From: Bigelowiella natans CCMP2755
Lineage: Eukaryota > Protista > Cercozoa
Assembly: GCA_000320545.1 (NCBI GenBank)
Contig: ADNK01000719.1
Location: forward strand, 1-46,841
Direction: 5' to 3'
Length of the DNA stretch: 46,841 nucleotides
The notes beneath the pieces were generated by a model. It saw nothing but the letters and a program-made list of their open reading frames with translations, was not told the origin of the DNA and did no database searches. Position numbers and translations under genes: made by a program. This document shows positions 7,185 to 33,386 of the stretch, one piece after another (position 1 is the stretch's first letter; the number at the start of each line of letters is the position of its first letter).

Positions 7185-7215
<31 letters not shown>

Positions 7216-12575: not shown

Positions 12576-12616
<41 letters not shown>

Positions 12617-14994
12617 TCAGCCTGCTTTCTACCTGCTACTCCTCCCAAAGGAATGACGCATAGTGTTTTACCCCAGAGTGCAACTTTGAACTTACATGCT
12701 CCTCGCAACGGTCGGACGCAAGCGGGCGCTACACGTCTCCAAATCGAGGTGGACCTTCCGCTGCATACAGGGGAAGAAGGCGGGCGCTCGCTGCGGTCTT
12801 TTGCGCTCACTGTTCATCCAGGCAATATATTGCTGCGGGCCAAGAAACAGCCACGACACCCCCTAGCTAAGGCTAAAATGCACCTGATAACCCCGCCTAG
12901 CAATGCTCTCATACCGGACCGGAAAGCAGGCGCCGACAGCCTTGTCGACCGAATTGCCATCCGATCACAACGGTTTGCCATTCACCTAGACCTACTGTCC
13001 ACAGGGATGGAGCGCGTGTGCGTGGCAGTGTGGCGGCGAAAGTCGCTCTTGGGCTACTTTTTCATTCCCATCGAGGCACTTGTCGACGGATTCGGCAAGA
13101 GCAGGGACCTGGCGGTGAGCGTGCCCCCGCTCGCGGAGCTCCCAATGTATCACTTGGCTACAACTACTAATCGTAAGGCGGCGCGGCAAGTCATTAAGTC
13201 AGCCGTTATCCGCTTCCCCTACTTCGAGCCTGCTCTGCCTGTCGCGCGAGAAAAAGGCCCGCTCTCCATCTTTCCTGGGGAGCGCGTGAAGCTGCGGGAG
13301 GGCGTGCAGCTGGAAGGGGTTCCCTCGGGATCGTGCGGCACAGTCCTCCGCCGAAGGAAATCCTCACCATCGTCACCGGCATCATCACCCAAAGGGCGGA
13401 ACGCATCCCAGAATAGCATCGTTCGAGAGAAACCTGCTGGCGCATTGGCAGCTGCAGTTAAAGGCGGGATTGAGACGGTGGAGGAGGAGAAGCGAAAGAG
13501 AGCAGCAGAAGGAGAGGGGGGGAATGACAAGACGGCAGACCCTCTTCCGTACAACGGGGATATAGGGGCGGCCATGCGTGCGCGTGATACAGAGGCAATT
13601 CGTCTGCTAATGTGTGCACGTAGAGCGACAGCACCGCCCTCCGCGAAGGATGCTGAAGCAGGGGCAATTCGTGGTAAGGCCAGCGAGGGGAAGGATGATG
13701 ACTCGGTTCCGTCCTTCGATGTGATGTTTGAGACTTTGGGGTCGGTCGGAAGGAAGGCAGAGGTGAGAGGCACTCAAATCCAGCGACTCTGGCGTCCAAT
13801 TCACCCCGTTATTAGGCCGGGAGGGGCGGAGCTCTCGGGGGAAGGCCTCCCCAAGCTCTACAATCCAGTATGGCAAGCAGTCTCTGATCACAGCGCGATT
13901 TTGCGTTTTTTTAGGCTGTGGAGTTGATTGCTCTTTCCCCACCCGTCCCCTGCAAAGCAATATATTCGTAGTAATTTTGGGAGGACGGCAAAAGTTGCCA
14001 GCGCACTCATCTCTCTTGCAGTCTATCATTTTCTGTTTTTCAAAGTCAAAAACCGTCTTCCCATGAGGCAGCATGTGCATTGATGCGTAGCATAGATGGC
14101 AGATCCGCGCCTTGTTTATGCTATAATTTTATCAAGGAAGGAGTGAGGCAATTCGCATCACGTTGATATCGCCGGTTGTCGGTTTCGATTCGGCCATGAA
14201 ATACCCCCTTTATTCAGGTGAAAACTTACACTGTCGCCCCCCCCCTCGTTGAGTCCCACTTCGCTGGGTGGAGCTTCAAGTCAGGATCAAGCATAGATCA
14301 GCACGTGGTTTCCATAGAGCTTCATCACGATACGGGAAGGGAGGCGGAGGAGAAAGGTATTGCGGCTTTAAGGGGCAATACGAATAGGGAGGCCGGGAAG
14401 TCAGAGGGAAAACCAGCTCGCACGAACTAGATGCAGCATATTTGCTCGATAAAAACAAATCCCGCAACAACCTTCTCCCCCTTCCTTTCCCCAGTGTTGG
14501 GTCGATTAGAGATAACGCTTGGTGGGCGTCTGGCTCCGGTGGGATCTATCACTGATCGCTGGTATCCGTTACAGCACCCGAGGAATCCGACCTCACGCCT
14601 ACTCCATCCACAGCCGCTCATTCGTGTGCGAATCGAGTCCCGCCCCGCCCCCGCCCCCCTCACGTGCTGTGTGTGCTACGACGAGTTTTTGCCAGATACC
14701 GCGCACTATTCGTGCGCGATGAACCCCGCGGGCCATAGCCTGTGCCGGGGCTGCTTTGTAGACTTCGTCTCGAGCGCCTGCGACCATTACATGGGAGGGG
14801 AGTTCCCTGTCCGTTGTGCGATGGGTTGCGGTCAACTAGTCCCGGAAGATGACATTTATGGTGAGAGGAAGAAGAAGAAGAAGGAGAAAAGCTCTTCATT
14901 GAAACCGACATCTGCCAGCCTGTACCCTCCCAACGATGAATACAAACATCATTTATCTTGTCTGTTGTCTCTCACGAACCCGGACTTCGTTGCT

Positions 14995-15067
<73 letters not shown>

Positions 15068-15071
15068 AAGT

Positions 15072-15115
<44 letters not shown>

Positions 15116-15600
15116 CGACCACCGTCAGGAGAGAGAGAGAGAGAGAGAGAGCGATAAAACGAAGAAGAGGGGGTTCGGTAACCTCTGGGATCGGTATGTG
15201 TGGACGTCAATCCAGGTGTCATTCTAGCAGCATCGTTTTTTCTTGTCTCCCCCCCCCCCTCCCTATTGACGGATATCTGAAACAAATAATGTACATAATT
15301 CATTTCCCTTCTCCCCCTTCCCCCACCACCCAATTTCATCAATGTCTGAAACGTTTAAAACAGGCGGGACTAAACGGTACTGGGGAGGCGGCACCCAACG
15401 AGTTCTCCTCCCTGGTTCTCACCTGCCAAAATGCCACGAGTACCACGAATGCTTTCCACCCCACTACCATAAAATGGCCAGAGAGCTGTTCCACAAATGA
15501 TCTGATGCCTCAGCCCTAGAGGTTAGTGGGTGGTTATGTCGGTTGTGGAGGAATCACGGCGTTGTCCTTGTAAACCAAAAGAAATATAACTTTGGATTTT

Positions 15601-15647
<47 letters not shown>

Positions 15648-16569
15648 TTATATATTTTGCGCACACGTATGATTTATACCGAGTATGATGGAGCTAGTTC
15701 GCCATTCGTCATTTATGCTACACTGAGGTGGGGCCCCCCCCCCCCCCCCTCCTGGCGCTACAATCCCCCAGGTCAAATACCTATTCCACGTCCGCCAGCA
15801 AAACTTCTGGCGCCGATTTGCCAGGGAGCAACGAGTAGTTCGCCGGCTGAACTTCTTGGAAGAGGTCAATTTTCCAACACGACTACACGGAAGTTTTTGT
15901 GGCCCCTCATACCTCGCAAAATCTACTCTTTCCCCACAGGAGCGAGTGAAGCGCGCCAAGCAGCACCGGGCGTTCGTAGCTGCGATGAAGGCAAGATACA
16001 AGGAGTTCAAGAAGGACCACTGGATGTTCTCCGTCTGCCGGAGCTGCGGGCTCTGCAGGCGCATTTACCAGCTTATAAGCGAGACGTGCCACGCGGCCGG
16101 AAATCGCAGACACACCGTCGATGATGACGTTCGGGTCCTCGATGTGAAGCGAGGGCATTCGATAATACCGGACTGGTACTTTGGAGGACGGAACAAGGAC
16201 GGGTACATCTCTGCCATAACCAAACGGATTGGCATCGGGCGCAGGGTGAGGGGGGGGGGGGCGAGGAGGGAGAAAATTTATCGTGTGCCTATTGGCTGTT
16301 ATGGCTGTGTCTGATGCGTCTTGCCCTCCTCCTCCTCCTCTTCTGCAAACGTAAAAAGGCTTAAGATTCGAGTGTCAAAAAAGGCCTCTCTGCTCGGGAT
16401 TGGTGGCTTGTGCTCAGCATCAACTTCCAATGTGGACATCTTCGTGACGGAGGGGGTCAACTCGATCGGAGATGAAGACAAGCTCCTTTGTCACTGCAAG
16501 CGGGTAGAGAACGTTCAATATGTTGTGACAAGAGCGCGCTATTCTTGCGTCGATGTATTATTCTCATTG

Positions 16570-16605
<36 letters not shown>

Positions 16606-16641
16606 TTATACATATATATGTGTGTGTGTGTGTGTGTGCAC

Positions 16642-16673
<32 letters not shown>

Positions 16674-16674
16674 T

Positions 16675-16713
<39 letters not shown>

Positions 16714-16943
16714 ACGTATATAATATGAAGCGAATAGCAAGAGTATAGACATTTGTGTGTGACTTAGGTTATGGTTTCCACCGGAAAGATGGAAAAAATC
16801 CACACTCTCATTTTAGATAGCGGAATTCCTATGGAGCCAAACAAATGGTAGGTGGGAACAGCTATATGGGGCATTTGGTGTCATACAGACCATATCTGCA
16901 CACGCAAACACACACATACACACACACACACGCACACATACAA

Positions 16944-16988
<45 letters not shown>

Positions 16989-17099
16989 TAGTTATAATCT
17001 CTTTTAATCCAATAATGCTTCAAATGAAAAGGTATAAGGTCGCTATCATTCAATCAGGAGGAGAGGCTTATTATATGGACAGGGTACCACACATAAATT

Positions 17100-17150
<51 letters not shown>

Positions 17151-18527
17151 AAATATAATATACCCTAGATAAATGCAGAATAGAAAGAACAATAAGATAT
17201 CTTGGATTTTGTGTGCACCACCGTAGCCGTCACCGAGCCGCCAATTCTTTGAAAATGGCGCAACCGTAATGGTATACGATGTGCGCAACCCCAATGGCGA
17301 AGATGTCTTGCTCGAGCTGCAGGTCACCCGCAACGATGAGAGCAACAACGGCACCTCCCCCAGCTCTGGGCAGCTCCCCAGCTTCTTTTTCATGGTGCCG
17401 AACGAGCATCAGAAGAAGACCATGAAGGCGGATACGGAAGAAAAGGAGGAGAAAGAGGAGAAGGAAGGCGGGAAGGAGGAAAAATATGAAAAGGACCTGG
17501 AATCGAAGGCGGCCGCCCCTCCCTTGTTTGTCTGCGTGAAAAAGTTTAATGGGGTCAACGATGAAGTCGACTCGGAGCTGCTGAAACTAGCGCCCGGCGA
17601 TGTCGTGCTGTGTGTGCGAGACAAGAAACTACCCGGGAACCTCGATCATGTGCAGCTCGTGGAGCTTGCCGATGAAGAGAAAAACGCTGTGTTCCTGCAG
17701 GAGGCGGAACGGGATGCCCCTCGAAGGGGCCTCTACCCGGGCGAAATGCTTCGGCGCGTGAAGGAGGGAACTCGTGAGCATGTGCGCCTTGTAGGCGTAT
17801 TCGACAAGTTGAAAATTCGCTACGACAAAACCCTTGCGGAGACTGGCTTTCGGCTGGGAAAGAGAAAGCAGAGGAAAGGGTGTGGGGCGAAGGGGGCAGG
17901 TAATGCACGAGTGGTAACAACATAACGCAATATAGAGAAATCATTCTATAGCTAAATTGTGACATTCCGATTTCGGCTTGACGCCCGTCTAAGAACTTGC
18001 CAACTACTTCCTTCTTGACTTGTTTTCCCTTACGATTCTGTGCTTTAAGCTGCTTTAGAGGAGGCCTCACTCGATAGCAATCTTGCGGCTGGCGGCCGCG
18101 TCAAACCAGGGCTATATGTCGTACGCAAGGGAACGCCTTCGTCGGAACGAAAATTCCTTAAAGAATCACAAGTTTTAGACAATCTCGCCATAGCTACAGG
18201 GGACATTGTGGAGGTGGTCGAGCCAGGCTCAGAGCCGACGTCAGGTGAAACCAAAGTGCGTTGCTTTGGCTGCGAGCGTCCAACATGAACCACGTATAAA
18301 TTATCAGAACGGCCAGAGGCAAAGGATGGTTGCGTGATCGCGCGGAAGCACCCGTTGATGAAATTCCAACGGTCGTTATATGATAGAGTGGAGACTTAAG
18401 TCGACTGCCTTTGGAGGAGGGGGGGGGGCGGGAGATATGGAAGTAAACTTGTTTGTTACCTAATTAAACTGGGAACAGTTTTTCGTGCTACACATTAGAT
18501 GGAGGCATATCCAAGGAGGAGAGAGGC

Positions 18528-18583
<56 letters not shown>

Positions 18584-19041
18584 TGTGTCTATAACTTCCC
18601 CGGTTTATGATTCAAGGGGAACATTCGCATTGTTCCTTGTGCGGCTGATGCAGAGCTCAGCTCTGCATTTTGGGAACTCATTATCGTTCTGGTCTGATGG
18701 TTTTTTATCCTTGTTGCTGCTATGTTGCGGTTTCCTATCTTCTCTCTAGATGGTGGCCTGGAGATTCCACGATACGTCTTAGTAATGATTATCGTGCCGT
18801 GATGTCTATTGACGGCGTGAGGCCCACCACTACCATCGCAGAACTGCGCAGGAAGATCGCCAGTAAGATTGGGTCAGAAAGGAGATTTGTGCTCTCCATT
18901 GGAACGAAGTTTGTCCCCCCTCAGCTCGACGATATTCCTGTATGGCAGCTAGAGTTTTTTCTTTGTGGTTTCATAGCATTAATCCCCTCCCCTCCCCCCT
19001 TCCACCTTTTTGCCCTTTATTTGCCGCCGTCGGTCTGTCTT

Positions 19042-19075
<34 letters not shown>

Positions 19076-22000
19076 CGTGTGCGTTTTTGTGTTTCTATGA
19101 GCTGCAAATGAGCAAAAGACTTAGCACTTTTGGTTTCGTTTATTCATTCTATCGGCCGACATTACTGAAGCAAATTGAAGGGAAGAGAAAGAAATTGATT
19201 GACTCAAAATCATACGGAGCACTTTCACGCCGAATTCGCTCACCAATTACTGTTTCCTTGGGGAACAGGTGGCGATGGTCGGAGTCCATCCTTGCCTACA
19301 TAACCTAGTTGTCCAAGTGATCGACAAAATTAAGGATTACGTACCTCATAAATTGCCTCTCGCAAGCTCTGGTAGTTTTTCTTCTCGTTAGTCCTGACAT
19401 TCGTCCGCAAAGGGTTTCTTATGCGTATACATGAGACCAGTTCATGGGGTTATAGCTCTTCACCTCTCCACGCCTCGCCCCCCGCACTCTCCCACATATC
19501 TCTCTTGTTTCACACGCATACTCACACACACACACACGCCCACTCATACTTAACACACTTTCTCTGGACAGACAAGTTGGAGGCAAAATCCTCCCTCAAA
19601 TTGACGGACACAACAGTTCGCTTTTTGGGACCTCGGCCACGCTCAATAGCCTTTCATCAGGTAGGATGTGGGTGTGAATGAAGCGGTGATGGCCGCTTTG
19701 CATAGCCATCGATCTGAATTTTTATCATTGCCGAAAACTTCTATCGAGTTCTTCCACAAAACGCACAGTGTGAGACTTGTGTCTTTTTCCAGCTCCGAAC
19801 CGTCGAAGATCTGGTGCTGGCTATTATGGACGTGTTTGAGACCAGGACGCTCTATGGCTACCTCATCCACGAAGGAAGGAAAATCCCCCTTCACATCGGC
19901 CCGAGCAGTATAGTCTGTGGCGGCACCAAGCGCCTCGGGATTGATCGGAAATATGCAGGAATTTCCCTTGACGCCCTCTGCAAAGAGCAAAGCCCTGTCC
20001 TTCAATCTATATTATATATAGACCTGATGGCGAGGTTTGAGCAAGTTGAGACGGATGACGTTGTGGCGGTGAAAGGCAGGGATGAGGGGAAGACTGTCTC
20101 ACATTCAACGCCAAAGAACTGTGATGTTGGGTGGCTGCCTGATCCTCCTCGTGTCGATGAAGTCTTTACAGGGCCCCAAATAACCAAATTCACCCCGAAG
20201 GATTTCATATTAGAAGGTGATATCCTTTCGTCTAGACGACAATATTTGTATGTCTCTCCTGTACCTTTGTTTGGGAAGTTTTCCCTCCGTCTCGAGTTCT
20301 TGCGAGCGAAGAAATCAGATGATTTGCTGGCGGAGATTGGTTCACAGTTTGGTATGTCATAGATAGCTCTCTGAATAAATGTCCTGGAATGTGTTTAATT
20401 AATGATGCTTATCCCAAATGTGTAGTTCGCATGATAAAAATATTTGCACACGAATTTTTCCCTGCGACCCTGTGGATACATCGATTGGGGAGAGGCCATA
20501 GATTCTTTCTACTTGAGTATCATGATGATCCTGAATGTATGGAAGGCCCACACTTTGAACCATACACTCACTTGAAAAGGACTATCTCTCACGTAACACG
20601 CGTTGTGTATGCGCCTCGCTGCTTTTGTCGTCATTGCAGAATTCGACCTCAGATTGATCACATCGAGAGAAGTCTTCAGTCTGAAGAACACCTTAGAAGG
20701 AAGGAGGATAGTGGAAGGCGATAGCATCCGCATTGACATTGATGCTCCCAACCGAATGGTCATGGTTCTGCACCGCTATCGCAAAGACCAGACCGATGGG
20801 AAGGAGGCCACCAATTACGGCACCGAGGCTTTCTCTGTTCCTTTCGATAATTCGGTCATCATACAGAAGAGTAATCCTGAAAGCCTGAGAATCACGGTGA
20901 ATGGATTCGCTAGCGTCGATCGTTACTACGGAAACTCCTACAAGATCAGAGCAAATTTAGAAATGCCCACAGACTGGACGGAAGGCTTTGTTCCCGAAAG
21001 CTCGCTTATACCCCTCAAAGATGTTGAAGACCGTGCGCTAATAAAGGCAGCACAGCAGCGCTACGGGGCCCTCATAAAGGCGAAGGGCTCCAGTGAAGAA
21101 GAGCTACAGGAACCATCAATTGAGATTCGTGATGCGAGGAAGATGGTTGCCGCCTTTCCTGAAGCACGCCTCTATTGTAGCAACGGGTCGGTCTTCTTCG
21201 CTTTGATCGCCTTTTCATTTAGATGTATAGTGGTTGTGGCTTCCTTCCTTCCATCACGCACCAGATTTATTGTTCGGTAGCGGCAAAACTAACGGTGAAT
21301 AATACGGTAGGTGCCATGATCGATCGACGTTTCTGCAAGGGCTGTCCTTCTACTCCTCCATTTGCCATCGCGCAAAGGGAACAGTTCACAGCAAGTCAAA
21401 CTACTGCTTGGTGTGCGGAAGTAACTCTTCCGCCATACACGCTTGTTGTGGTGGATGCGACTTTCACACTGGTAACGGATCAAAGTGTGGGGGTCATGAA
21501 TCCGATGTGATGGAAGCGAAGTTCTCGGTGCGGTAGATTCATTCCCTAATTATATCTTCGTAATTTCAATGCAGCACTAAGGATGTCGATGGACATGCCG
21601 CTTTGTTTGTCAGGTTCCTTCATGTAAGCCGCATAAAAGTCCTCCTGTAAGGAAGGATTTCAATGCGTCCGGAACACTTATCAAAGTCACTGCCAGTGGT
21701 AATCTTAAATTCAGCAAAACGCACGCGTATGCACGGCACGCACGCATAAATGGTGCACTTCATCGTCCCACACATCTCGTTGTCCGGTGCTGCCATTTTA
21801 GGCCTTGCGCTTACCCATGTGAAAGTCTTTTGCCGCACCAAGCGTGGGGATTCGATCGTAGAGTTGAAAGTTTCTCTGTGGGACACTTCCGCGAAGAAAA
21901 TGCTCGATTTCGGAGAGTATGATCCTCAGAAGAAAACTGAGGTGGCAAAGGAGGCCAAGCAAAAGGGAAGCAAGGTGAGGGCATTGTCTTCGTAAAAAGA

Positions 22001-25000
22001 GTCTTGTTGTTGTTACCCACCTTGCTATCGCTAGTTTTAATTCCTTTGAAACCTATGGTAGATTTCTATCGACGATGTCGCTGTGACTGTGTACATGAAA
22101 CGAGGATTCGTCCTGCAAAAAGGTGTCAAGTACGCTCTGATGGTTACGCAAAAAGATGGGGTGTTCGAACTTGAGTCGGGCATGAAGACGCCGGGTGTTG
22201 GACATTGCAGTTGCAAACAATGGTCATGCAAAGTTACATATCCGGAACAGCTACGAAGGCACCCATCTGGCGAGTCATCGTCGGCGTGGAAGTTTGATAC
22301 AAGCCAAAAACTGAATGTACGAGCGCCTTTTTTTTTCAGTTTATTTCATATTTGCTTCTTCTCACTGTAGTCCGATTTAAGTCCCCCTCCTCTCCCTGCA
22401 CCAAGAATAGCTGCCGTAGTTATGTTTGTGATTTTATATTTGGCATTGTGAAATCTACGAGAAGACAACCCTTCCTTGAATCTAAGTGAAAAATATGTTC
22501 GCATTTTGGTCAGTTTTTCAGCCGAACTGGTCCTGTCCAATGCTGCTACTTCATGCTCGGGCACCATCCTCTCCCGGACGATGCCGAGAGTAAAGAGGAC
22601 ACAAACGACGCCACGGATGAGAAAGGCCTCACTACCCTCCCGCCATATTCACCTTCCCAGCTCTGCGAGGTTTGCATGTTCAAGGGAAAGCCCGACCGCA
22701 ACAATGAGACGAAATGCTCTATCTGCAATTGCTCGACCCAAATGACCACGGCTACTCATGGGACGCAGCGGGTCACGCCCTACAGAGACTTCACGACTCT
22801 TGAGAGAGTCGAGTGCTGGCAATGTGGCTACAAAAGTCTTGGCTTTGTCCCCGAGTGCTGTGCATGCGGCGCAAAGACGAACTTGAAATTGGATCAGCGG
22901 GAAATCACCAACATGGTCCTTCCTCGGAAGGGCCATGGAACAGCCCTTTTCATCGCGGTGAAGGATGGCGTAACCTCCCTTTCCAACCGCGGACGCCTCG
23001 AGCTCATCCCAGGAAAAAGGGTCAAAAACCATATTTATCTCGAGTCGCTTCGATTCAGGTGGTACAGCCATGCCGAATACGCTTTATCAGCCAACGCCTT
23101 GTCGCAGTGCTGTTGATGAAGAATATTGATTTTGACTTTGATTACTTTTACTTTCCCCTGCACTCCAAACCAGGAAAGGGGATGTGATTGAACTAGTGGC
23201 TGCTTTTGTGCCGGGGCCCGGGAACAGAAATACCTTCGTGGGATTGAAACGGCGCGATTTGTACAATTCAGGAGTGGGCTCCGTCGGTTTGCTGAGGAAA
23301 GATGCGGTGCTGCAGCATTGTCACGAGGACACCGAACTGTTTTTCCCTCCATATTTTATCTTCGCTTTGTACCCATACCACTGCGGTCTTATTATTGACA
23401 TGTTATTATTCTCTATGATACATTGTGGGCGGTTCAGGTGCGGCTCACGACCGTTGAGGAACGACTAGTGCTGCTAGAGCAGTTCGAAAGAGCAAGGACT
23501 GAAAACTATATTCCAATGCGAGCACGAAGGGCTTTTGCTACGACCGAGAAAGCCTTAAAATGTAGTGCATAGTTTTCTCAATCTTCCCTTATCTTCTTCT
23601 CATTGGTTGGTGGAAGAAACACAGATGATGCTCATAATTCATGCATTTGCTTCTCGATAAGAGTTGCCGATATCATTATTATGCATATATGTAAATAATA
23701 TATATATATATATATATATACAAATTCCCTTAGGTACTACATGCAGTGAGGTGGGGCCTATGTCCCTTCTCCACCGCAAAACGTGCCTCCCGTGCGTCAC
23801 AAAGGATGGGGATGGGAAACGTGATAACAGCAGCAAGGACTCGAAAGAAACAGCACTGCCATCAGCTATCCACAGCAATGTCATTCACGCCGAGCACCAA
23901 ATTAGGCTCGCAACAGGGAAAATGAAGCGGGACGACGAAAGAATACCGCGACCTGCTCGGATGGAGATAACGATGGGGAAGGCAGATAAAGACGAGAGCA
24001 AAAGCGTCGTCCAGAATGGGATGTACGTCAGTGGGATTGCGGTAGACCTGAGTGCAAACGATATGAAAAAGAGTAGGTACCACACCAACGTCACCCTAGA
24101 GGTCGAGGTAACTTCGCCAACTGGAAGAAATAATAAGGAAAGAGCTGTTCTCATCAGGCCGAGGTAGAATGATTATGGCATCTCAGAGCAACACGAGGGC
24201 CGCCGCACACAAATATCAAATAGGCCGCCGCACACAAATATCAAGAGAATAAAAGCAGAGTTACCGAATTCTTCATACACGTACTCTTTGCTCTTCTCCC
24301 TCCTTTTGCCTTTAGGAGTACTAAGGACACGCCGGAATGCGAGCATTTAAGTCTGGCCATCAGCGAAACAGAGTTTGTCCACAGTTTGCCAAAAGGAAAG
24401 GAACCAGGGCCAATGGTACAGCTCACCTGTGAGAAAATAGCACGCTGCATATAGATATTATGATAATAATAATAATTAGCGCATACATATCTAATATCAG
24501 CCCATGGTACTTCTCAGCTGAAAATCTTTAAACATACAGAGAGAAGTTCACCCCCAAAAACTGCTTGGTTGAGAATGCCTGTATAACCACGTATCTATTA
24601 ACCACGTATCCGCTACCCAGATGAGATGGGAAAGGGGAAAGGGATCCAAATTCTTTATAAGGCCACCATTAGCCTCTGAAGAGGATGTCAGTGTTATAAA
24701 CTGGCTATCAAAGAGAATGAAAAGGTCGTTTTATCACCCAAAACAATGTGACATTTCACAGGTCGTTTGAAATCAGGTGATCGTTTAGAAAATCAACTTG
24801 CTAGTTCTTATTCCGCATGCGATGAATTTTCGTACCAAAACCTGCTCATTTCAAAATCTGTACAGATTGCCCTCGGCAAAAACCACCGTGGCCTATTTCC
24901 AGATGAATAATGGATTTGTTCAATCATATCAGGGGCGCTGAGCTTGTTAGCATCATTGACGAAAAGGGTCGGTACCTGACCTCCTACGCTGGTGGAGGCA

Positions 25001-27032
25001 AGCCTGCGTGCATGATGGAAGCCACGGAAGAGAGCAAATCTGAAGAGAGGTTTCGCAAAAGTGCGAGCTTCGCTATGGAAAAGCACAATGTAGAATCTGG
25101 AAGCTTCTCGCTGACCGCTCTCATTCCTGATCATGGTGGGCTCCTTGTTGACATAGTTTCGCTCGGTCTCGCTGCGATGCCATAGAGTGCCCTCACAGAG
25201 GAGTTTTTCCCCAGCAAACTTCCTTAGCCATTTTAATTTTTGAACCTTGAAGACCTTTGCCACTGAGTCTAAGTATGCCCCATTCCCCTCTCCCCCCCCC
25301 CCTCCCTATGTATTGCTGCTAGGGCGGGCATTTTTGCCATTCAACCCGGACATCGCGCTAACCGTTCAATCGTACTGTGAGCACTCAAGCAAGTTTTTCA
25401 TTCAAGACTACGTCGACACCAAGCAGCTCTTCCTCGAGGAGGGTCTTGGTTTGCAAGGAAAAACCAAGTCGGGTGGACAGGCTGCAGCAGCGGGGAGCTT
25501 TTGCTTCACTTTCCCTTCCATTGAGGCGCTCCCTCGCATCCCCCACCCGGTCGTGCCCGGGGCCGGGGATGATAATGACGACAAGAAGAAAGAGTCAAAG
25601 AAACAGAAGAAGAAGAAGAGGAAGAAAAAGGGGGGGAAAGAGAATAGCACAAACAACAGCGAATGCGTCCGCTTGTCAATGAATCCTCCAGTATTCCTAC
25701 CTCCGGGTGCAAAGGCAACGTTCCGTTGCTACCCGGTTTGGAATCGCCAACCATGCAAGCCATTTGAAGGCCCTCGGACATATCGAATCGGTCGCAAGCT
25801 TGGCCAAGCAAACATGTCCGATAATGGCAGTGAAATGTCGGGAGGCACCTTCTCACTGACCGCCACGGATAAGCGCATCACTCATATCTTCGTCGTCGCA
25901 GCGGACGGCAGAAAGGAGCCAATCCGTGAACGAAAAGGACAGCATCTTCGCCCCGACAACGTTGCCGTCAGGGGGGGCGACAGCAGCCGATCGTCAAGAC
26001 AATGGTTTCGTGTCTCACGCCCCGTCTTAACTGAGCGGCGCTACTTTCTAATTCGAAAGGCTATGGTGGCAGGACTGCGAGTCGGGGACGTTCTCTTTCG
26101 CGACCAACTTCGACGAGGCCATTCCGAGGCCAAAGAGCAAGATGGAAACCTCCTCCACGTCTATCGGCCGACATTCTTAGCCTCGCACCATGAGTGTTTA
26201 GCCGGACGCCATTCCCTGAAAGCGTCCCGCGTCGAGAAATCGTTTGTCTGCCGCTACGGCGAACACAAGCACGAAGCGGGTGTAATTATCGAAAAATGTA
26301 CAAAATGCGCGTATTACCGATGTCCGCGACTAGCCTTGACGTCAAAGCCCCTGGGCGGAGAGACACTTGTTCCCGCTACTCCTCGATACCATCCCGCGTT
26401 TCCAGGGAGGGTCTTTCAAAGGTGGAGGCACAAGTGGGGCCAGGGAGCACTTCGGTGCGCCGTGAGCGGGAAGGCCATCAGACCTGGCGAGGCGATCTGG
26501 GTTTCGCAGTTCGAAGAAGATGACAGGCCGTATAAACAGTAAGGCTTGCCTTTTTTCTTCGCCATTTCTCGCACATCATGTCTTGGTATTTTTTTGCATG
26601 AGGGAACTTATTTTGAGAGAGAGGGAAAGGTGGCAGGCAGTACCATTTCAAAGAGTCCCATACTCTTAAGTCAGATCGAACCCTCCCGCCCCCTATTTCG
26701 AGAATCTCGTTCAGCAAACCATACATCACCAAAATTGATCGTGCTTTCGAAACCGCCGTTTTGTGTGATTCCGGACAGTCTCTGCGTTGTTTGTTTGCAT
26801 GTGTGTTTGCGCGCTCGTATCATGGTCATTGGCGGTACAACATTGTCGATAAGTTCTTCCATATATTTCGCTTCATTACATAACTAAGGTATAACTTCCC
26901 AACAAAGTTGATGAGACACCACTACCGCCAGAGATATATTCGGTAAGGGTATTTTACACGTAGAGCGGTGGTTGAGAAGAACAATAATTGTACATTAATC
27001 CCCCGCTCCACACTTAACCCTCGCCAGTTGTC

Positions 27033-27069
<37 letters not shown>

Positions 27070-28826
27070 ATATAAATGTATATGTGGATTAATTTTAGAA
27101 TTCTAGACGCTCACATGCCGATGTACGGCTCAGCCAGCGGGCTGGTACCCGGTGAGTGCCTCACGCCTATTCCCGCCGAGGAAGTCGAAGAATTGCGCTT
27201 AGAAGCCCGACTAGGGGCTGTGCAGAGCTTCGATGAGGAGCGCCTTGGAAAACTGCAGAGGGAAGAAGAGCTGGAGGCCTCGGCCGCTCGGAGCATAGCG
27301 CACGCCCTTGCCTCCCTCGGGCGAAGGGTTTGCTGTGAGTTGTGTTCTATGGAGGGGACCTTTGAAAGGCTGGTTACAGAATGCCGCGACTGCAAAAGCG
27401 GGGCTTGGGGGCATCGGCTTGTTGAGCTAGACATGGACGCTGCGGAGGCGAAGGGTGACACGCATGAGGCGAAGGCCGGGGGGCTGACCGAGATCGGAAC
27501 AACCCTGCAGGATGGCGACGATGAGAAAGCTGGTAAGGAGGAGAAATGGGCTAGGCTCAAGGGCAGCAATAACGTCCTCAGAAGGTGGCTTTCCTGTCTC
27601 CGTCTCTCCACCGAAAATGGAAATACCTCCGCCATCGAATCACCGGCTTTCCCACGGCCTTCTGGTTCATTCTTTGTTGCGCACAAAGACTGGAAAGCGA
27701 ATTCTTCGCACCTAGCGACGTTGTGGCCAGGGATCGATGTTGATGCTGCTCGCCATTCGCTGCATGTGAAGAAGGGCGATGTTCTCCGCATCCTCAGCTC
27801 CCCGCCGAACCTTACTTGCATCTACGCTCAGGTAGTAAGGCCAGACTTTATCATTGTCGCTATTGTCATCTCGTTTTTCCGACTGGATGCGAAATCTCTT
27901 TGAGTTGGTGGCAATGCCGCCGGGGGGGAGGACATGCTACCGCCGCCGAGAAGAGAATGCATTTTTCACTCGTCGTTTCTTCCTTTTCTATGCCTTTCAC
28001 CACATCGCCATCTCATTTTTAACAGCCAGCCGTCCTTCCCTCCGACTCATTCTTAGGTTGTGAAGCGAGCAGATCCGAAGATGGCAGAATTGGACAGAAA
28101 GCCACGGTGCAAGCACGGGGCGGTATTTTCGGCGCTGCGTGACAACGATAAATCAAACTGGTCCTGCCAAGGCAAGGACGGCGATGGGCTCTGCCCACGG
28201 CACATGAACACGCATACGCGTGGAAACCGATTTTGCAGAGCGGAGGAGTGTTGGAGCCGTTGCAGCCTGTGCGAATACTGCTTTTCCCAGGCGAAGAAGC
28301 AGCTCGAGGGCACTGCCGAGCCTACCAAAACCAGCTTTTCGGGGCTACCCCGAGGGTTTGTGCCCCTCGCAGTCCTTGCAAATTATGGTTTTGAGAGTGA
28401 AGAGAGCAGTGCGTTTATTGCGACGATTGAGGCAGAGACGCAGCGATCACGTCGAGAGAAGGTGAAAAGGGAGGAAGAACGGCGAAGAAAGGGCGAGGCG
28501 CGGAGAGAGCACAGCAAGCGCGTAGAGTGGATAAAGCAGCGACATTTTGTATCGGTTCAAAGAGCCACGAAGGAACAAGTCGTGCTAGGTCCTACCTGGG
28601 AGTATTCGGCGCAAGCAGAAGAGTGGTTAGACTTTATGGTAGGCGCAGACTCTCCTGCCGGCATATCGCTGCTCTCTGTGGACCTTTTCGTACCAAAAGA
28701 GAAGGATATTACCAAAGGTGAGAAATGTGCGGTAGGACGTGGGGTGTAACTGATTCTGGGCGTTTGGAGGTTTTTTTTCGCATCGTAACTGTATAAAAAC
28801 CACGGGCGTTGTCGACATGCGCTAAC

Positions 28827-28860
<34 letters not shown>

Positions 28861-31049
28861 GGATTGCTATTCAAGATATCTAAACTTCTGCCAAACGCTC
28901 AAGGATTCTGTCCGAATTGCGCTTTTGATGTGGCTTTGTTTGGTAGGGGAATACTTCGATCTGCGAATCTACACAGCCGATCTTCCTAGGTATGTGCGTC
29001 GATTCTTTCTTCCGCCACACACCGAAATTAGAGCATATTCTGTCAAAGCACATTTTTCCCTCATGTATTGGATTCTGACTTGCGTGGCAATTGCTACGAT
29101 TTCCTTCCCCCTTCCCACCCCCCTCTTTCCCTTCTTTTCCCCTCCCCATTCGAAGGCAATCTCGTCGACGTCCTCTTGCGCAAGCAAGATATTCAAGCAG
29201 GGTGCCTCTTGCAGGCGACGATAACGCGGACGGCAGCCAAAGTTCCATAACGGAGGATGGCCGCAGCAATGAGAGATTCACCCTAGCATTACCCCGGCCG
29301 CTCTCGGTGCGGCGTGGCGTTTGGTACACGCTGAGGCTCCTGCAGATTTCGAAACGGACTGCGAGCTGTGAAAATGCCGCTGCGTTCGCGTTTGCAGAGA
29401 TTTCCCATGGCAGGGTAGCGGATCTCACGGTACGATTCCGAGCAACAACGTTGCAGGTAGATGAGAGTTGTAGTGGAGACGCGAAAAAGAGCGAGGGGGG
29501 CGGGGGGCATGTGGGGACGCGAAATGGTGTTATAGCTTGGCCCTCATGTACAATTCCTCCCCCAAATTGCCGCCAATACCCACTCTTAGAAAGATGAGAA
29601 ATCCGGCGGAACAAGCGCTCGGTATGGGACTTTCCCAGCCCTCAACTTTAGTTGCCTCGCTGCTCACCCACCCTCCGCCATGCTGCCCAAGAACCTGCCT
29701 GAGAGTATCTCCTCGTCACCAAAGCTGGCCTTGGGTCTTGTGGGGGCGGGAAGGTGCACGATTGTCGGGATTAAACCTGGCAGTGGTGGGGAGTGGGTTG
29801 GAGGGGAAGGTCTAGTACCTGCCGTCGGAGAGCAAAACCTTATAGCTGTGTGGAAGCGAGAAGGCGGAGAAGAGGGCAAGGTACTTGACAGGGAGCGAGT
29901 TGAAAACACCTCCCGCCCATTTCCTTTTCGTTGTCCCCCCCCCCCCCCCCCGCGGAGTTCTCTCGAGCAAGCATGACTTCGTCCTGCAATAAGTTTGGAG
30001 AGTCCACCTGGAGCTGACACGCCATCAGATTGCGGAGTTCCGGACTTATTTGCGTGTCTTTTCTAGGCGTTGCTGGGGGGGATGGAGCGTGGCCGCATCG
30101 TGTTCCCGCGCGTGGCAAAGCATGAAATGTACAGCGTCTTTCGGATTCTCTCTCACACCGTTGCATACTGATAGACTGAATGCGTAACGCCCTGGTGTGC
30201 TGAAGATGGTTGTTGCTGCCCTATATGCGGTAGTAGTGCGGCATGTTTCTCTCTAGATCTTCATTGTAGTGCGCTATGGACGTCTCAAAAAAATCCCTCG
30301 TCCGAATGAGCGGTCGTCATTCTTTTCGCCAAAAATATCTAGGTACTTCCCATGAGAATGGCTAACCGCGCCTGTGAGCGGAGAGGCTCTAAAGAAAGCA
30401 TTGCTGGCGTGGGAGGAGGACGAAAAGAGAGAAGGCGAAGTCGACGGTAAGCGTCAGAAGAGAGGCTAGATGCAATTCTAACCGGCCACCACACAAAATC
30501 TACACAGCAAGAAACTCACAAACAGAAACACACAAACCGGGGAGTGCATATTCTAATCACGGTAATTTTGCAACTTGTCCCGCTTAAAGCCCGCCGCCGG
30601 TCCCGTGCTCTGCGCCGTCAGCGGGCTCGGTCTGCCTCACGCTCAAGATCACGGTCGCGCGGAACGGAGGCGGATTCCGCATCGGACAGCGAGAGAAGCG
30701 GTCAGGCCAGCCCTGCACGTGTGAGGAGACGGCGACGCAGTGGAAGCAGAGGCGGCGGCTCACGAGGAATGAAGGGTTTTGAGGAGGTTGCAAGCGGGAA
30801 AGACGAAGACGCGGACGCCCAAGCAGCGAAGTATTGGACTTGCGAGCTGTGTAAGTTCGGGAAGAATCCTGACGAGCGAGAGAGCTGTCTTCGATGTGGT
30901 GCGTACGGCTGCCTATGGGTAGAGGAAGGAGCGGAGGAGGGGGGGCAGGTCGATCTTGATGTGGTCGAGGATGGAGACGAGGATGAGGATGAGGAAGGTG
31001 CTGAGAATGGAATCATGGGAGACATTTCGGATCAAAAGGTGGAGGCATT

Positions 31050-31094
<45 letters not shown>

Positions 31095-33386
31095 TGCGCG
31101 TGAAGGATGTACAAGTGAGCTATGGAAGAAAAGAGTCCTAAAACACCTTTTTTCTCTCTCTCTGCTATCATCACCATCACCATCACCATCATTGCTATTA
31201 TCACCATCGTCGTTGTCATTGTAGTTGCACCCACAACCATTAACCCATCGCCGTGATTCCGCGTCATTATACGCAATAGTCATCGCTGCCATCACCATCA
31301 TTATCATCATTTATTATGACGGTCGATCATCAGGGGCTCACCAGCAGCATCGGAGACGCCTTTGGTCCTAACTCAATGACTGGCGTGTATTTCGAGTGCC
31401 AGCTTGAGGCATGCAGGTGCGAATATATGCATGTGTGCATATTGACAAATACATCGAACATTGATTATGCTTCGAGGCGATTTCTATATACGTTTCCCAG
31501 AATTCCCCCCCCCCTCTCCCCACCTCACCTCCCTTGTGACGGATTTCCCGCAGAACATTGACATGCCTACGGTGCTTGAAGCACGTGCCTCCGTCCCAGA
31601 AGATGACTCACGATTGCGAGGTCAGCTCCCCCGAGCGCGGCAGCGCGTGCGCGCTTTTGCCATTTCTCGTAATCGTCCACCTGTTCCTATTCTATGACGG
31701 GCGTGTCCCCAAAATCAACGAAAACAGCATCATGAAGTCTGCCCTGAGAAGACTGAGAAACCCCTCCTCAACCGTCCGATTGTTTGCCTCAGGGGTTGAT
31801 GGGCGTCGTGACCCTCTACAAGGATTTCCTCTCTATTCTTGCCAAATCGTCGTCGCAGCTGTGCCCGAAGTGTGGAAAGCCTGGGCTAAAGGTAGCTCTA
31901 GGCAATTCAATTGGGATCAATTCAATTTGGATCATCATTAATATTAACCTGCCGAGACGTTCGCTATAGCGGCAGCACCTCCGCATCTTCATCATCATCA
32001 CCACCACAATTCTTCTAACATTGACGGCACTGAAAGCGCCGATGATTGCTGGAGCTTTTTGAGTTGTATCTAGGGGATTACTCGCCCCCTCCAAGATGTT
32101 TCTTACGATGGAATCTCATCTCAGGACCTTGCGTGCACGCACATATCCTGCAACTGCGGCGCGAAATGGTGCTACATGTGCGGAAAGGACTTCACGGGTG
32201 GGTTTGGCAACCATAACAATTGGAACAATTCCAACGGTCTCAAAAAGGTAGTAGCACCTCGAGTGTCGTCTCGAAATGCGTGACTGGTAGAGAAATAAAA
32301 TAACGAATGTGTGCGGAGCAATTGTATTTTGTCACCATTATGATCATCATCATTATCGTCATAGTGATCATCACCATCTTCTGACGGAGCTCCCTCCTCC
32401 ATAACTATTCATTTCCCCCCCCCCATATCAGATTGGGCATTGCCCGCAATATTTGAGGGCGGTGTACGACAAAGGGAAGGGCTCGGCGGAGACGGCCCTG
32501 CGCCTCTTCCACATGCACAAAGCAAGGGTTATCCTGTTTAATGCTTGAGCGAAAATTACAAAAATGATGCCATTGCAGAGAACAAAGAGAATGGTTTTCG
32601 TGTCGCCAAAATGACCGTGTCGTGACGTTAGTCAACCCTTGAGTTTCACTTGCTCACAAACTCGAATCATGGGCGACTGGTGCTGCTACTGCAGCTGCTT
32701 TGACAGTTTTTCTAATTTCCTCCACATACAGATGGCTCTGGATCGCTTCTATATTAGCATGACCGCAGAGAAAAAGAGGAATTTTCCAGTAATGATGGAA
32801 AGGTCGTCACGGCGGTGTTTGCGACCCATTAAGGATATCCAGCCCCCAGATTCAAAAGAGAATATGCGGGCATTAGGAGAGGGGAGAGTGGGGGGCATGC
32901 ATAAGGCCGTAACTGCTGCCGTTATTGCAAGTTTTTGATGTCCTGATTTGCTCTTCATGCCTTCACAGGTACTTTCCTGAGGGCATCCTCGACAAGGAAG
33001 ACCACAAAGAATTAATGAGGGTGTGCAAAGAGTGCTTTCAAGAAGGCGACTCTGCCTGGGCCGTCCAGGAAAAGGTGTCTGCACGCAAGTCGCCACATAT
33101 GTGTTGCTACCGCCACGGGCGCTTCTCCAACTTCCTGTCCATGGCGCAATACTGATGATGATGATAAACACTGCAGATGTATTATGATGGTGACGATAAA
33201 CATAGTAGTGATGATGGCAGTTGTTGGATGGCTGCTCGTTTTTTACTACCATCGTTATAGCCATTATGTTTTATAGAGTATTCCTATGGTCATTATCAGC
33301 CACCGGTCGATTGGAGCCGCAGCACTTTTGACGGTGAAGGCGATGACGGCAATGACAAAAAAGATAAGGAAATCAAGGCACGGTGA
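11555..33386 (+). CDS. Giant multidomain RBR (RING1-IBR-RING2) E3 ubiquitin ligase, about 50 exons and roughly 4,100 aa: C2-like, RING1, 3xPHR, at least 4 SH3, ubiquitin-like, RanBP2-type and other Zn fingers, IBR, RING2
   Basis: Phase-consistent GT-AG exon chain traced by hand from MQSRAADS... to ...DKEIKAR-TGA (33384-33386). Domain motifs are listed separately below. Junctions at 15364-15521 and 29810-30446 are ambiguous, so a split into two genes is not excluded. Confidence 0.72.
14218..14580 (+). other. C2-like domain (C-terminal half) in the giant E3
   Basis: VVSIELHHD...EK|VLGRLEITLGGRLAPVGSITDRWYPL matches the C2 ending lG.v.i.l.....d.Wy.L. A second C2-like segment, VCVAVWRRKSLLGYFFIPIEAL, lies at ~13015-13085. 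Confidence 0.55.
14665..14860 (+). other. RING1 finger of the RBR module
   Basis: CCVCYDEF...CAMNPAGHSLCRGCFVDFV...VRCAMGC has C3HC4 spacing resembling RING1 of RNF216/TRIAD3-type RBRs. Confidence 0.85.
14999..15152. repeat. Intronic compound microsatellite (CT)n-(AT)n-(AT)n-(GA)n
   Basis: Directly visible; representative of dozens of intronic dinucleotide and trinucleotide tracts in the window. Confidence 0.95.
16171..17391 (+). other. PHR domain 1 (5 exons)
   Basis: W.FGG...IRVSKKASLLGIGGL...LDSGIPMEPNKWYKVAI..SG..AYY...SNNGTSPSSGQLPSFFF. The ending matches the PHR hallmark SNNGTS...GQIP..lF of BTBD1/2 and MYCBP2. Confidence 0.85.
16571..16712. repeat. Intronic compound (AT)n/(GT)n microsatellite
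   Basis: Directly visible alternating AT and GT blocks. Confidence 0.95.
17521..18783 (+). other. Two SH3 domains
   Basis: LFVCVKKF...LLKLAPGDVVLCV...RRGLYPGEML and LYVVRKG...LAIATGDIVEVV...QR|WWPGDSTIRL. Confidence 0.7.
18790..19330 (+). other. Ubiquitin-like domain
   Basis: MSIDGVRPTTTIAELRRKIASKIGSERRFVLSIGTKFV..LDDIP|VAMVGV...LVVQV fits the beta-grasp pattern v.p..TI.eLk.kI....g.....L...gk. Confidence 0.6.
21614..22552 (+). other. Divergent PHR-like domain 2
   Basis: IKVTASGLALTHVKVF...VTVYMKRGFVLQKGVKYALMV...RTGPVQCCYF parallels PHR domains 1 and 3. Confidence 0.5.
22660..22875 (+). other. Two RanBP2/NZF-like CxxC...CxxC zinc fingers
   Basis: CEVCMFKGKPDRNNETKCSIC and CWQCGYKSLGFVPECCAC. 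Further fingers: LKCTTC...TCLPC (~23560-23795) and WTCELCKFGKNPDERESCLRC (30835-30897). Confidence 0.65.
22945..23445 (+). other. SH3 domain 3
   Basis: LFIAVKD...SLRF|RKGDVIELV...GSVGLLRKDA|V; the L.F.KGDvI.l signature is joined across an intron. Confidence 0.7.
24198..24244. repeat. Direct duplication of ggccgccgcacacaaatatcaa in an intron
   Basis: Two exact 22-nt copies at 24198-24219 and 24223-24244. Confidence 0.9.
27670..28385 (+). other. SH3 domain 4 with an inserted Cys/His-rich zinc finger
   Basis: FFVAHKDW...SLHVKKGDVLRIL...CIYAQ|VV...[CKH...WSC...C.RH...C...C...C..C..C]...RGFVPLAVL. Confidence 0.6.
28540..29655 (+). other. PHR domain 3
   Basis: VQR...TWEYSAQAEEWLDFMV...ISLLSVDLF...FTLALPRPLSVRRGVWYTLRL...SGGTSARYGTFPALNF. 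Confidence 0.7.
31385..32450 (+). other. IBR (last six Zn ligands) and catalytic RING2/Rcat of the RBR module
   Basis: YFECQLEAC|RTLTCLRC...THDCE, then LCPKCGKPGLK|DLACTHISCNCGAKWCYMC...H...C. The predicted catalytic Cys is at 32134-32136 and the His at 32140-32142. Confidence 0.9.

What the first reader, a model, noticed from the sequence alone, without database searches (positions are those of the whole stretch)
14665..32450. RBR E3 ligase whose RING1 and RING2 are about 3,000 aa apart, with the insert apparently inside the IBR
Seen: a clean RBR-type RING1 at 14665-14860, then a helical linker and a CxxC (CRSC, 16036-16047) where IBR ligands 1-2 normally sit. The remaining six IBR ligands (FECQLEAC, TCLRC, H..C) and an intact RING2 (CPKC...ACTHISC.C...WCYMC) appear only at 31385-32450. 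No free CxxC or second RING1 precedes them; the nearest four Cys form a complete RanBP2-type finger. A hand-traced exon chain of about 3,000 codons connects the two halves. Established: in Parkin, HOIP, ARIH1 and RNF216 the RING1-IBR-RING2 unit is a contiguous 200-250 aa, and accessory domains lie outside it. Inference: either a very large cargo is looped out of one IBR zinc site, or the RBR is split over two adjacent genes that could act in trans. I know of no precedent for either.
Basis: partly seen in the sequence, partly recalled or inferred. Interest (0 to 1): 0.85.

Follow-up and report, generated by a model that had tools for sequence, protein, structure and literature searches.

The report
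Giant split-IBR RBR ligase gene, interrupted
This Bigelowiella natans gene belongs to an apparently undescribed group of protist RBR ubiquitin ligases that carry an insert inside the middle (IBR) zinc domain, here about 2,900 residues long, but this copy's spliced mRNA has an in-frame stop codon between the two halves, so it probably cannot make both halves as one protein.

Summary
RING1 (14665-14860) and the IBR ligands 3-8 plus RING2 (31334-32247) are real. Both match the two halves of one small protist RBR family (Leptophrys, Ploeotia, metagenomes). Every member of that family carries a 100-280 aa insert between IBR zinc ligands 2 and 3. So an insert inside the IBR is a family trait, and it is expanded here to about 2,900 aa.

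Spliced RNA contigs from three studies fix 14 exons between 26.5 and 32.5 kb. They join the RanBP2-finger exon directly to 31334, so there is no hidden RING1/CxxC exon. One 10.5-kb contig probably reaches RING1.

- CRSC is not the ligand 1-2 site. The homologous hairpin lies in a missed exon (15364-15521) and has lost ligand 1.
- The mature mRNA carries an in-frame TGA at 30353, 180 codons before the second IBR half.
- A second TGA (15498) probably lies in the missed exon.

A second giant paralog (contigs C1145/C1144/C1143) has insert, IBR half and RING2 in one 1,553-codon open frame.

Verdict: a new variant of RBR architecture. This copy is most likely recently disabled, or else split or bypassed. 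I could not decide which.

The parts
11977..14355 (+). Predicted 5' exons of the gene (start ATG of the JGI fgenesh model Bigna1 70788 = P0001). N-terminal region with SH3-like and C2-like parts.
   Evidence: P0001 mapped exactly onto the window. Names. Prediction only; no RNA was laid here.
14494..14860 (+). Exon with the end of a C2-like domain and RING1 (Cys/His ligands at 14665-14860). It ends in phase 1 at a GTGAGA donor.
   Evidence: phmmer, 8 hits. Family HMM E 4.7e-23. tblastn with P0002-P0008, E 1e-10 to 1e-13.
15364..15521 (+). It encodes the post-RING1 helix and the hairpin homologous to IBR ligands 1-2. It reads S-H-L-P-K-C where the family has V-T-C-x-x-C, so ligand 1 is lost. An in-frame TGA lies at 15498-15500.
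   Evidence: It is in phase with the RING1 exon and with the acceptor at 15772. tblastn with P0005, E 3e-4. It is the best window match to HMM positions 166-187. Paralog comparison. The exon limits are not confirmed by RNA.
15772..16202 (+). First exon of the insert (helix F-W-x-x-F-A-R-E-Q-R, as in paralog C1144).
   Evidence: P0001 model. Paralog exon order. CRSC has no counterpart in the family alignment.
16360..26538 (+). Predicted insert exons (about 20). A PHR domain spans about 16171-17391. A large exon lies at about 25323-26538. The donor at 26538 is confirmed by RNA.
   Evidence: P0001 holds PF08005 PHR, E 1.8e-8. Frame-keeping exon chains found by dynamic programming. Joint 26538>26889.
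26889..30128 (+). RNA-confirmed insert exons: 26889-26942, 27099-27831, 28057-28717, 28947-28989, 29156-29456, 29590-29880, 30067-30128. They form one open frame.
   Evidence: Spliced contigs in runs X1, X2 and X3 from three studies. All introns are GT..AG and no stop occurs.
30343..30446 (+). RNA-confirmed exon with the in-frame TGA at 30353-30355. The same frame stays open afterwards.
   Evidence: RNA and genome agree (no other letters). Only a weak GAG acceptor at 30379 would skip the stop in frame, and no contig uses it.
30590..31038 (+). RNA-confirmed exon with an Arg/Ser-rich stretch, a RanBP2/NZF-type finger (about 30832-30913) and an acidic linker. The first ATG after the TGA lies in this exon.
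   Evidence: The same module order occurs in paralogs C1143 and C2031.
31334..31620 (+). Two exons (31334-31416 and 31554-31620) with IBR ligands 3-8: C-x4-C-x4-C-x2-C-x11-H-x-C.
   Evidence: Weak matches, in the right order, to HMM positions 288-327.
31793..32247 (+). Two exons (31793-31891 and 32125-32247) with RING2/Rcat: C-P-K-C ... C-T-H-I-S-C. The presumed catalytic Cys codon is 32149-32151. The G-G-F-x-x-H-N-x-W motif follows.
   Evidence: Pfam IBR E 0.003. Family HMM E 5.7e-12 and 4e-5. 51-58% identity to P0003/P0004/P0006/P0008.
32432..32548 (+). Last exon with the family tail motif (H-C-P-x-Y-L ... A-L-x-x-F-H). Stop codon at 32546-32548.
   Evidence: HMM E 4.3e-4.

Best explanation
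The locus is one transcription unit of Bigelowiella natans. It encodes a giant paralog of a protist RBR subfamily in which the loop between IBR zinc ligands 2 and 3 carries an insert.

In short members the insert is a 100-280 aa antiparallel helical hairpin. This hairpin would bring the ligand 1-2 hairpin back next to ligands 3-4. Here the insert has grown to about 2,900 aa and holds a PHR domain, SH3-like parts and a RanBP2/NZF finger.

By analogy with solved RBRs, RING1 would bind E2~ubiquitin, the Cys of C-T-H-I-S-C in RING2 would take ubiquitin as a thioester, and the insert modules would bind substrate or ubiquitin.

In this copy, however, ordinary translation cannot give both halves in one chain. 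The mature mRNA has an in-frame TGA at 30353. A second TGA probably lies at 15498, and ligand 1 of the IBR is lost. The copy is therefore most likely a recently disabled, still transcribed paralog. The intact example of the architecture is the paralog on contigs C1145/C1144/C1143.

Shown here: the homology of both halves, the family insert, the splicing of the 3' third, and the TGA. Inferred: that both IBR parts share one zinc site, that the transcript is continuous from RING1 onwards, and that the copy is disabled.
For: Family and insert:
- Searches show members with RING1, an invariant T-C-x-x-C, an insert, ligands 3-8 and RING2 in single transcript-derived proteins.
- In L002, RING1 to ligand 4 lie in one genomic exon.
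- The AlphaFold model of P0008 has a strand hairpin at 244-260, helices 264-309 and 318-351, and strands 359-380.
- All top fold matches are RBRs. RNF216 gives Z 10.7; RING1 aligns to Parkin, HOIL-1 and RNF144 at rmsd 2.3-2.9 A.

The window:
- It matches the family HMM piece by piece and in the right order.
- RNA contigs from three studies join 14 exons, and 31038 is joined to 31334.
- The X2 contig holds 6,794 nt upstream of 27098. My exon sums place RING1 at 6,048-6,471 nt upstream.
- The TGA at 30353 is in both RNA and genome, and all three frames are closed there.
- No contig uses an alternative joint.
- Ligand 1 is lost, and the donor of the paralog (AAA|GTACCA) reads AGA GAG here.

The paralog: C1143 has PHR, NZF, IBR half and RING2 in one 1,553-codon frame.
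Against: - All other zinc ligands and the catalytic Cys are intact, and RING2 is 51-58% identical to distant homologs.
- There is no frameshift in 3.2 kb of RNA-confirmed coding sequence, and all 14 confirmed introns are spliced.
- The frame stays open for 91 codons between the TGA and the next ATG. That fits a very recent mutation, but also a bypass of the stop.
- Contigs drop rare isoforms, and the raw-read run gave only 3 reads.
- The TGA at 15498 and the whole 5' two thirds of the gene have no RNA evidence here.
- Contig continuity is weak proof of one transcript. The X2 contig also runs about 530 nt past the stop, possibly into the next gene.
Confidence: 0.5

Rival explanations
1. The locus still makes one giant active RBR polypeptide. 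The TGA at 30353 (and the one at 15498) would be bypassed by a minor splice isoform, for example the acceptor at 30379, which removes 36 nt in frame. Alternatively the stop would be read through or recoded.
For: - The frame is the same on both sides of the TGA and stays open for 91 codons up to the next ATG.
- An in-frame alternative acceptor exists.
- The catalytic half is fully conserved.
- According to earlier scan notes, B. natans has selenocysteine machinery.
Against: - No contig in three runs shows the 30128>30379 joint.
- The acceptor is a weak GAG with score -0.8, against 0.5-11 for confirmed sites.
- No SECIS-like match at E up to 5 in 29800-34500.
- The sequence around the TGA codons is not a known read-through context (my own knowledge).
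Confidence: 0.2
2. The RBR is functionally split. A giant protein would carry RING1 and the ligand-2 hairpin, and a separately translated small protein would carry NZF, IBR ligands 3-8 and RING2, starting at the ATG about 22 codons before the finger. The two would assemble in trans.
For: - The stop lies exactly at a module boundary, between the SH3-like part and the Arg/Ser-rich part.
- Contig C2031 holds the same C-terminal module in one 390-codon frame, with no RING1 within 38 kb upstream.
Against: - Both ORFs sit on the same spliced RNA, with thousands of upstream AUGs and no sign of an internal start. That call could not have shown such a start.
- On C2031 the ATG-bearing Arg/Ser-rich part is in a different frame from the finger, so that copy may itself be broken.
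- In paralog C1143 and in all short homologs the halves are fused.
Confidence: 0.12
3. Two or more unrelated neighbouring genes were joined only by the assembler and by hand-tracing. RING1 and RING2 would then belong to different genes by chance.
For: - The JGI model P0001 ends at 20359.
- Logan contigs can merge neighbouring genes (note).
Against: - The two halves are the complementary halves of one family unit, in the right order and on the same strand.
- Every exon from 26538 to 32548 is linked by a splice joint.
- P0001 ends by reading into an intron.
- Frame-keeping chains exist across 19769-26538.
Confidence: 0.03

Closest known systems
Canonical RBR E3 ligases (Parkin, ARIH1/HHARI, ARIH2, HOIP, HOIL-1, RNF216)
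   Same: - RING1 with RBR spacing.
- IBR ligand pattern C-x4-C-x4-C-x2-C...H-x-C.
- RING2 of the form C-P-x-C ... C-x-H-x-x-C with a catalytic Cys.
- The model of homolog P0008 matches these structures best.
   Different: In solved RBRs the RING1-IBR-RING2 unit is contiguous, about 200-250 aa (established knowledge). Here 100 to about 2,900 aa lie between IBR ligands 2 and 3. Pfam sees only RING2 in the homologs. The family also has its own tail motifs after RING2.
Protist split-IBR RBR group found here (P0002-P0008: Leptophrys vorax and Ploeotia vitrea transcripts, IMG metagenome proteins, locus L002; B. natans paralog on C3629)
   Same: The same RING1, the same post-RING1 helix and ligand hairpin, and the same ligands 3-8, RING2 and tail motifs.
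   Different: - Their insert is a 100-280 aa helical hairpin; here it is about 2,900 aa with folded domains.
- They keep ligand 1; the window copy does not.
- They have open frames; the window mRNA has an in-frame TGA.
HOIL-1 and HOIP (NZF plus RBR)
   Same: A RanBP2/NZF-type finger lies shortly before the catalytic part (domain order of HOIL-1 from my own knowledge).
   Different: In HOIL-1 and HOIP the NZF lies N-terminal to RING1, outside the RBR. Here it lies after RING1, inside the IBR insert.
MYCBP2/Highwire/RPM-1 (PHR proteins)
   Same: Very large E3 ligases with PHR domains (PF08005 in P0001, E 1.8e-8, and in the C1143 frame, E 7.9e-6).
   Different: Their catalytic module is RING plus a tandem-cysteine relay, not an RBR (my own knowledge). 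No other similarity was found.

Membership tests
RBR E3 ligases | RING1: a C3HC4 finger with RBR-type spacing that binds the E2 | tested here: met
   All eight ligands are present at 14665-14860. Family HMM E 4.7e-23. RING1 of homolog P0008 aligns to Parkin, HOIL-1 and RNF144 RING1 with Z 8-9 and rmsd 2.3-2.9 A. E2 binding was not tested.
RBR E3 ligases | IBR: eight zinc ligands in one contiguous domain of about 50-60 aa | tested here: not met
   Ligands 3-8 are at 31397-31620. Ligand 2 is at 15432-15434, about 2,900 codons upstream. Ligand 1 is replaced (H-L for T-C). The Pfam IBR model gives no hit on this middle domain in the window or in the homologs.
RBR E3 ligases | RING2/Rcat with a catalytic cysteine | tested here: met
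   C-P-K-C x9 C-T-H-I-S-C-N-C x4 C-x2-C after the RNA-confirmed joint 31891>32125. Pfam IBR E 0.003 on the exon. HMM E 5.7e-12. Catalysis was not tested.
RBR E3 ligases | RING1, IBR and RING2 in one polypeptide | tested here: not met
   The only isoform assembled in three runs has an in-frame TGA at 30353 between the halves. A bypass of the stop is not excluded.
Protist split-IBR RBR group (defined here) | Invariant T-C-x-x-C-G hairpin 25-35 aa after RING1 | tested here: not met
   The window has S-H-L-P-K-C-H at the homologous place. Only the second Cys is kept.
Protist split-IBR RBR group (defined here) | F-F-x-C-x4-C-x4-C-L-x-C ... H-x-C, then K-D-L-x-C-T-H-I-x-C, G-G-F-x-x-H-N-x-W, C-P-x-Y-L and A-L-x-x-F-H | tested here: met
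   All motifs are present, in order, in exons 31334-32548.
Protist split-IBR RBR group (defined here) | The ligand 1-2 hairpin and ligands 3-4 form one zinc site (the insert is a loop of the IBR) | tested here: inconclusive
   The AlphaFold model of P0008 has the expected strand-hairpin, helical-hairpin, strands order. The tool gives no coordinates and models no zinc, so Cys-Cys distances could not be read.
PHR domain proteins (PF08005) | PHR domain above Pfam's cut-off | tested here: met
   P0001 residues 830-987: 35.5 bits against a cut-off of 23.6. On single exons the match is only E 0.01.

The most novel reading that the evidence does not exclude
The stop at 30353 is functional, not damage. 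In that reading B. natans would run a naturally split or gated RBR. One form: a giant scaffold carrying RING1 and the first IBR hairpin, plus a small NZF-IBR'-RING2 protein, would assemble through a shared IBR zinc site. Another form: rare bypass of the UGA would meter out the active full-length ligase.
Probability: 0.15. Interest if true: 0.85.

Novelty: new variant of a known kind. Interest (0 to 1): 0.6.

Why it matters
RBR ligases are treated as a compact three-domain machine, and the IBR as a small rigid spacer. A natural family shows otherwise. One IBR loop accepts anything from a 100-aa helical hairpin to thousands of residues with folded domains. This marks a permissive insertion site in the RBR core. 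It also offers natural material for asking what the IBR's first zinc site is needed for, and whether the two halves of an RBR can work when they are physically separated.

The family is missed by Pfam-based annotation: only RING2 scores. RBR counts in protists may therefore be too low.

For this locus, the practical point is that both gene models and hand-traced chains hid a real in-frame stop that only RNA showed.

Tried and rejected
Searches that led nowhere:
- The search for homologous proteins gave nothing useful in three tries. Low-complexity words swamped the word filter, and the length window excludes long models.
- The look-up of encoding contigs had no record for P0001.
- The metagenome scan added only two loci.
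- Pfam on single exons is nearly blind, and a six-frame IBR search of the genome does not see this contig.
- tblastn between the two giant paralogs aligns only the RING1/C2 region and the catalytic core, so the inserts cannot be shown to be homologous.
- No second allele of the TGA region exists in the assembly.
- Three literature searches found no description of the family.

Ideas rejected:
- CRSC as IBR ligands 1-2.
- My own first guess that 15885-15920 (H-G-S-F-C-G) was the ligand site. The paralog shows that this exon is the helix after the hairpin.
- A direct join 26538>27099. RNA shows an extra 54-nt exon.
- Acceptor 32074. RNA uses 32125.
- Selenocysteine at the TGA: no SECIS-like match and no redox motif.
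- The fgenesh path around 15498 through an 8-nt exon. It is implausible and it deletes the conserved hairpin.

Exons were searched by reference. Joining was used only inside the sandbox, to follow the reading frame.

Full report
**Organism and setting.** The window is a whole 46.8-kb contig (C3018) of a 91-Mb assembly. The RING1 exon is 99% identical to a 1,567-aa protein, P0001, that EukProt names Bigelowiella natans, JGI model Bigna1 70788. The gene is rich in introns, and many of them hold microsatellites. A ULK/ATG1-like kinase gene lies upstream.

**The two halves are real and belong together.** The RING1 exon (14494-14860) has all eight ligands. In a search of 1.8 billion proteins it found only eight hits: P0001 and seven proteins of 269-782 aa. 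Four of those seven come from Trinity transcripts of Leptophrys vorax and Ploeotia vitrea or from IMG metagenomes and are full length. All of them have the following order:
- RING1;
- a helix;
- an invariant T-C-x-x-C-G hairpin;
- a variable stretch of 100-280 aa;
- F-F-x-C-x4-C-x4-C-L-x-C ... H-x-C;
- a RING2 with K-D-L-x-C-T-H-I-x-C;
- the tail motifs G-G-F-x-x-H-N-x-W, C-P-x-Y-L and A-L-x-x-F-H.

In the metagenomic contig L002, RING1, the hairpin, about 245 aa of insert and the next two cysteines lie in one uninterrupted exon. An HMM of this family hits the window piece by piece and in order:
- RING1, E 4.7e-23;
- the hairpin region at 15270-15497 (weak);
- the two IBR exons (weak);
- the first RING2 exon, E 4e-5;
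- the second RING2 exon, E 5.7e-12;
- the tail, E 4.3e-4.

So the window's two ends are the two halves of one ancestral unit. An insert between IBR ligands 2 and 3 is a family trait, not a peculiarity of this locus.

**Is it an IBR loop?** The six-ligand element has exactly the spacing of IBR ligands 3-8. In solved IBRs the first zinc site uses ligands 1-4 in sequence (established for Parkin; my own knowledge). The invariant T-C-x-x-C is therefore the obvious source of the two missing ligands.

An AlphaFold model of P0008, built on 8 sequences with mean pLDDT 60 and RING1 at 80-90, shows this order:
- a strand hairpin at 244-260 carrying the two cysteines;
- two long helices, 264-309 and 318-351, that form a hairpin;
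- strands at 359-380 carrying ligands 3-6.

All best structural matches are RBRs. RNF216 gives Z 10.7. RING1 aligns to Parkin, HOIL-1 and RNF144 at rmsd 2.3-2.9 A. The tools give no coordinates, so the shared zinc site remains an inference. Pfam sees only RING2 in these proteins, and three literature searches found no description of them.

**RNA evidence for the 3' third.** I had one read-laying run and used it on 26500-32480. Spliced contigs from three runs of three studies (4.8, 10.5 and 5.0 kb) agree completely with the genome. They define 14 exons, all with GT..AG introns. Four of these exons were missed by frame-gazing: 26889-26942, 28947-28989, 30067-30128 and 30343-30446.

The contig has exactly 150 nt between 31036 and 31791, which is 83+67 nt, the two IBR exons. 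The RanBP2-finger exon is therefore joined directly to 31334, and no RING1 or CxxC exon is hidden there. RING2 uses the acceptor at 32125, which gives the canonical spacing.

The 10.5-kb contig carries 6,794 nt upstream of 27098. My exon sums use the P0001 model plus a splice-aware dynamic program that came within 65 nt of the truth on the confirmed part. They place the first RING1 cysteine 6,048-6,471 nt upstream. The contig therefore probably includes RING1. This is an estimate, and contigs can merge neighbouring genes: this one also runs about 530 nt past the stop codon.

**The in-frame stop.** Following the frame through the confirmed exons, 715 codons are open from 26538 to 30128. Then a TGA occurs at 30353-30355, 11 nt into exon 30343-30446. 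All three frames are closed between 30067 and 30360. After the TGA the same frame runs on for 342 codons to the true stop at 32546.
- RNA and genome agree at the site, and the assembly has no second allele.
- The only in-frame escape is a weak GAG acceptor at 30379. No contig uses it.
- No SECIS-like element scored in 29800-34500.
- Ninety-one codons stay open between the TGA and the next ATG. That fits either a very recent mutation or a bypass.

**The 5' half.** tblastn with P0005 hit 15429-15497 (E 3e-4). It is in phase with the RING1 exon (phase 1). It ends at a good phase-0 donor (GAG|GTTAGT), which matches the strong phase-0 acceptor at 15772. It encodes the post-RING1 helix and the hairpin.

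The hairpin reads S-H-L-P-K-C, so ligand 1 and the invariant Thr are replaced. A TGA lies at 15498. In the paralog on C1144 the exon ends at AAA|GTACCA. The window reads AGA GAG there, so the exon runs 39 nt further and takes in the stop.

The fgenesh model avoids the stop by cutting out the hairpin and using an 8-nt exon, which is implausible. The exon at 15772 (F-W-x-x-F-A-R-E-Q-R) corresponds to the paralog's next exon. CRSC therefore lies inside the insert and is not the ligand pair. None of this 5' structure is confirmed by RNA.

**Paralogs in the same genome.**
- *C3629* holds a compact member with all parts within 2.7 kb.
- *C1145, C1144 and C1143.* C1145 ends with a C2-like domain plus RING1. 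C1144 starts with the rest of the linker and V-T-C-Q-K-C; P0005 bridges these two. C1143 has one 1,553-codon open frame with a PHR domain (E 7.9e-6), SH3-like parts, an Arg/Ser-rich stretch, an NZF finger, an acidic linker, IBR ligands 3-8, RING2 and the tail. This second giant member is open where the window has its TGA. The two giant copies share only 32% identity in RING1, and their inserts do not align, so the duplication is old.
- *C2031* has the C-terminal module alone in a 390-codon frame, with no RING1 within 38 kb. Its ATG-bearing Arg/Ser-rich start is in another frame, so its status is unclear.

**Reading.**
- The transcript is continuous where I could test it.
- This copy cannot make both halves in one chain by ordinary translation.
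- The evidence for damage is one confirmed stop, one probable stop, a lost invariant ligand and a lost donor. On that basis I rate recent inactivation of a still-transcribed paralog as most likely (about 0.5).
- A bypass that gives the full protein comes next (about 0.2), then a functional split (about 0.12).
- The intact catalytic half and the absence of frameshifts keep the last two alive.

**Limits.** Exons were searched by reference, and joining was used only in the sandbox to follow the frame.

Noticed in passing
window 1900-9000, + strand: Upstream neighbour: a multi-exon protein kinase gene with ULK/ATG1-like motifs (G-K-G-S-F-A-T-V-W, H-P-N-I-V-R-L) and long Gln/His-rich stretches. Seen only in frame translations.
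   Followed up: no
window 32668-33152, + strand: A possible next gene starts only about 120 nt after the stop of the RBR gene. Its ATG at 32668 is followed by a Cys-rich start and a C-x2-C ... C-x2-C finger. The 10.5-kb RNA contig seems to run into it, so the transcripts of the two genes may overlap.
   Followed up: no
G000:C2031:38790-40013 (L004, L010): A copy of the C-terminal module only (Arg/Ser-rich, NZF, IBR ligands 3-8, RING2, tail), without introns. No RING1 lies within 38 kb upstream. The ATG-bearing start is in a different frame from the finger, next to a C5 run. This could be a frameshift, an assembly error or a retrocopy.
   Followed up: partly
G000:C1145 end, C1144, C1143:1-6810 (L013, L012, L009): A second giant split-IBR RBR gene spread over three contigs with consecutive numbers. 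Its last 1,553 codons are one open frame without introns, whereas the window copy has five introns in the homologous catalytic part.
   Followed up: partly
G000:C3629:51670-54870 (L011): A compact member of the same family (RING1, V-E-C-K-R-C hairpin, short insert, IBR half, RING2, tail) within about 3 kb.
   Followed up: partly
window 31402-31566 and 29881-29951: Low-depth unspliced contigs (depth 2.4 against 26) show some retention of introns 31417-31553 and 29881-30066. The second contig stops at a poly-C run.
   Followed up: no
P0004, P0008 (Leptophrys vorax): Some short family members end in several predicted membrane helices (long helices 549-707 in the P0008 model). The B. natans copies lack these.
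   Followed up: no
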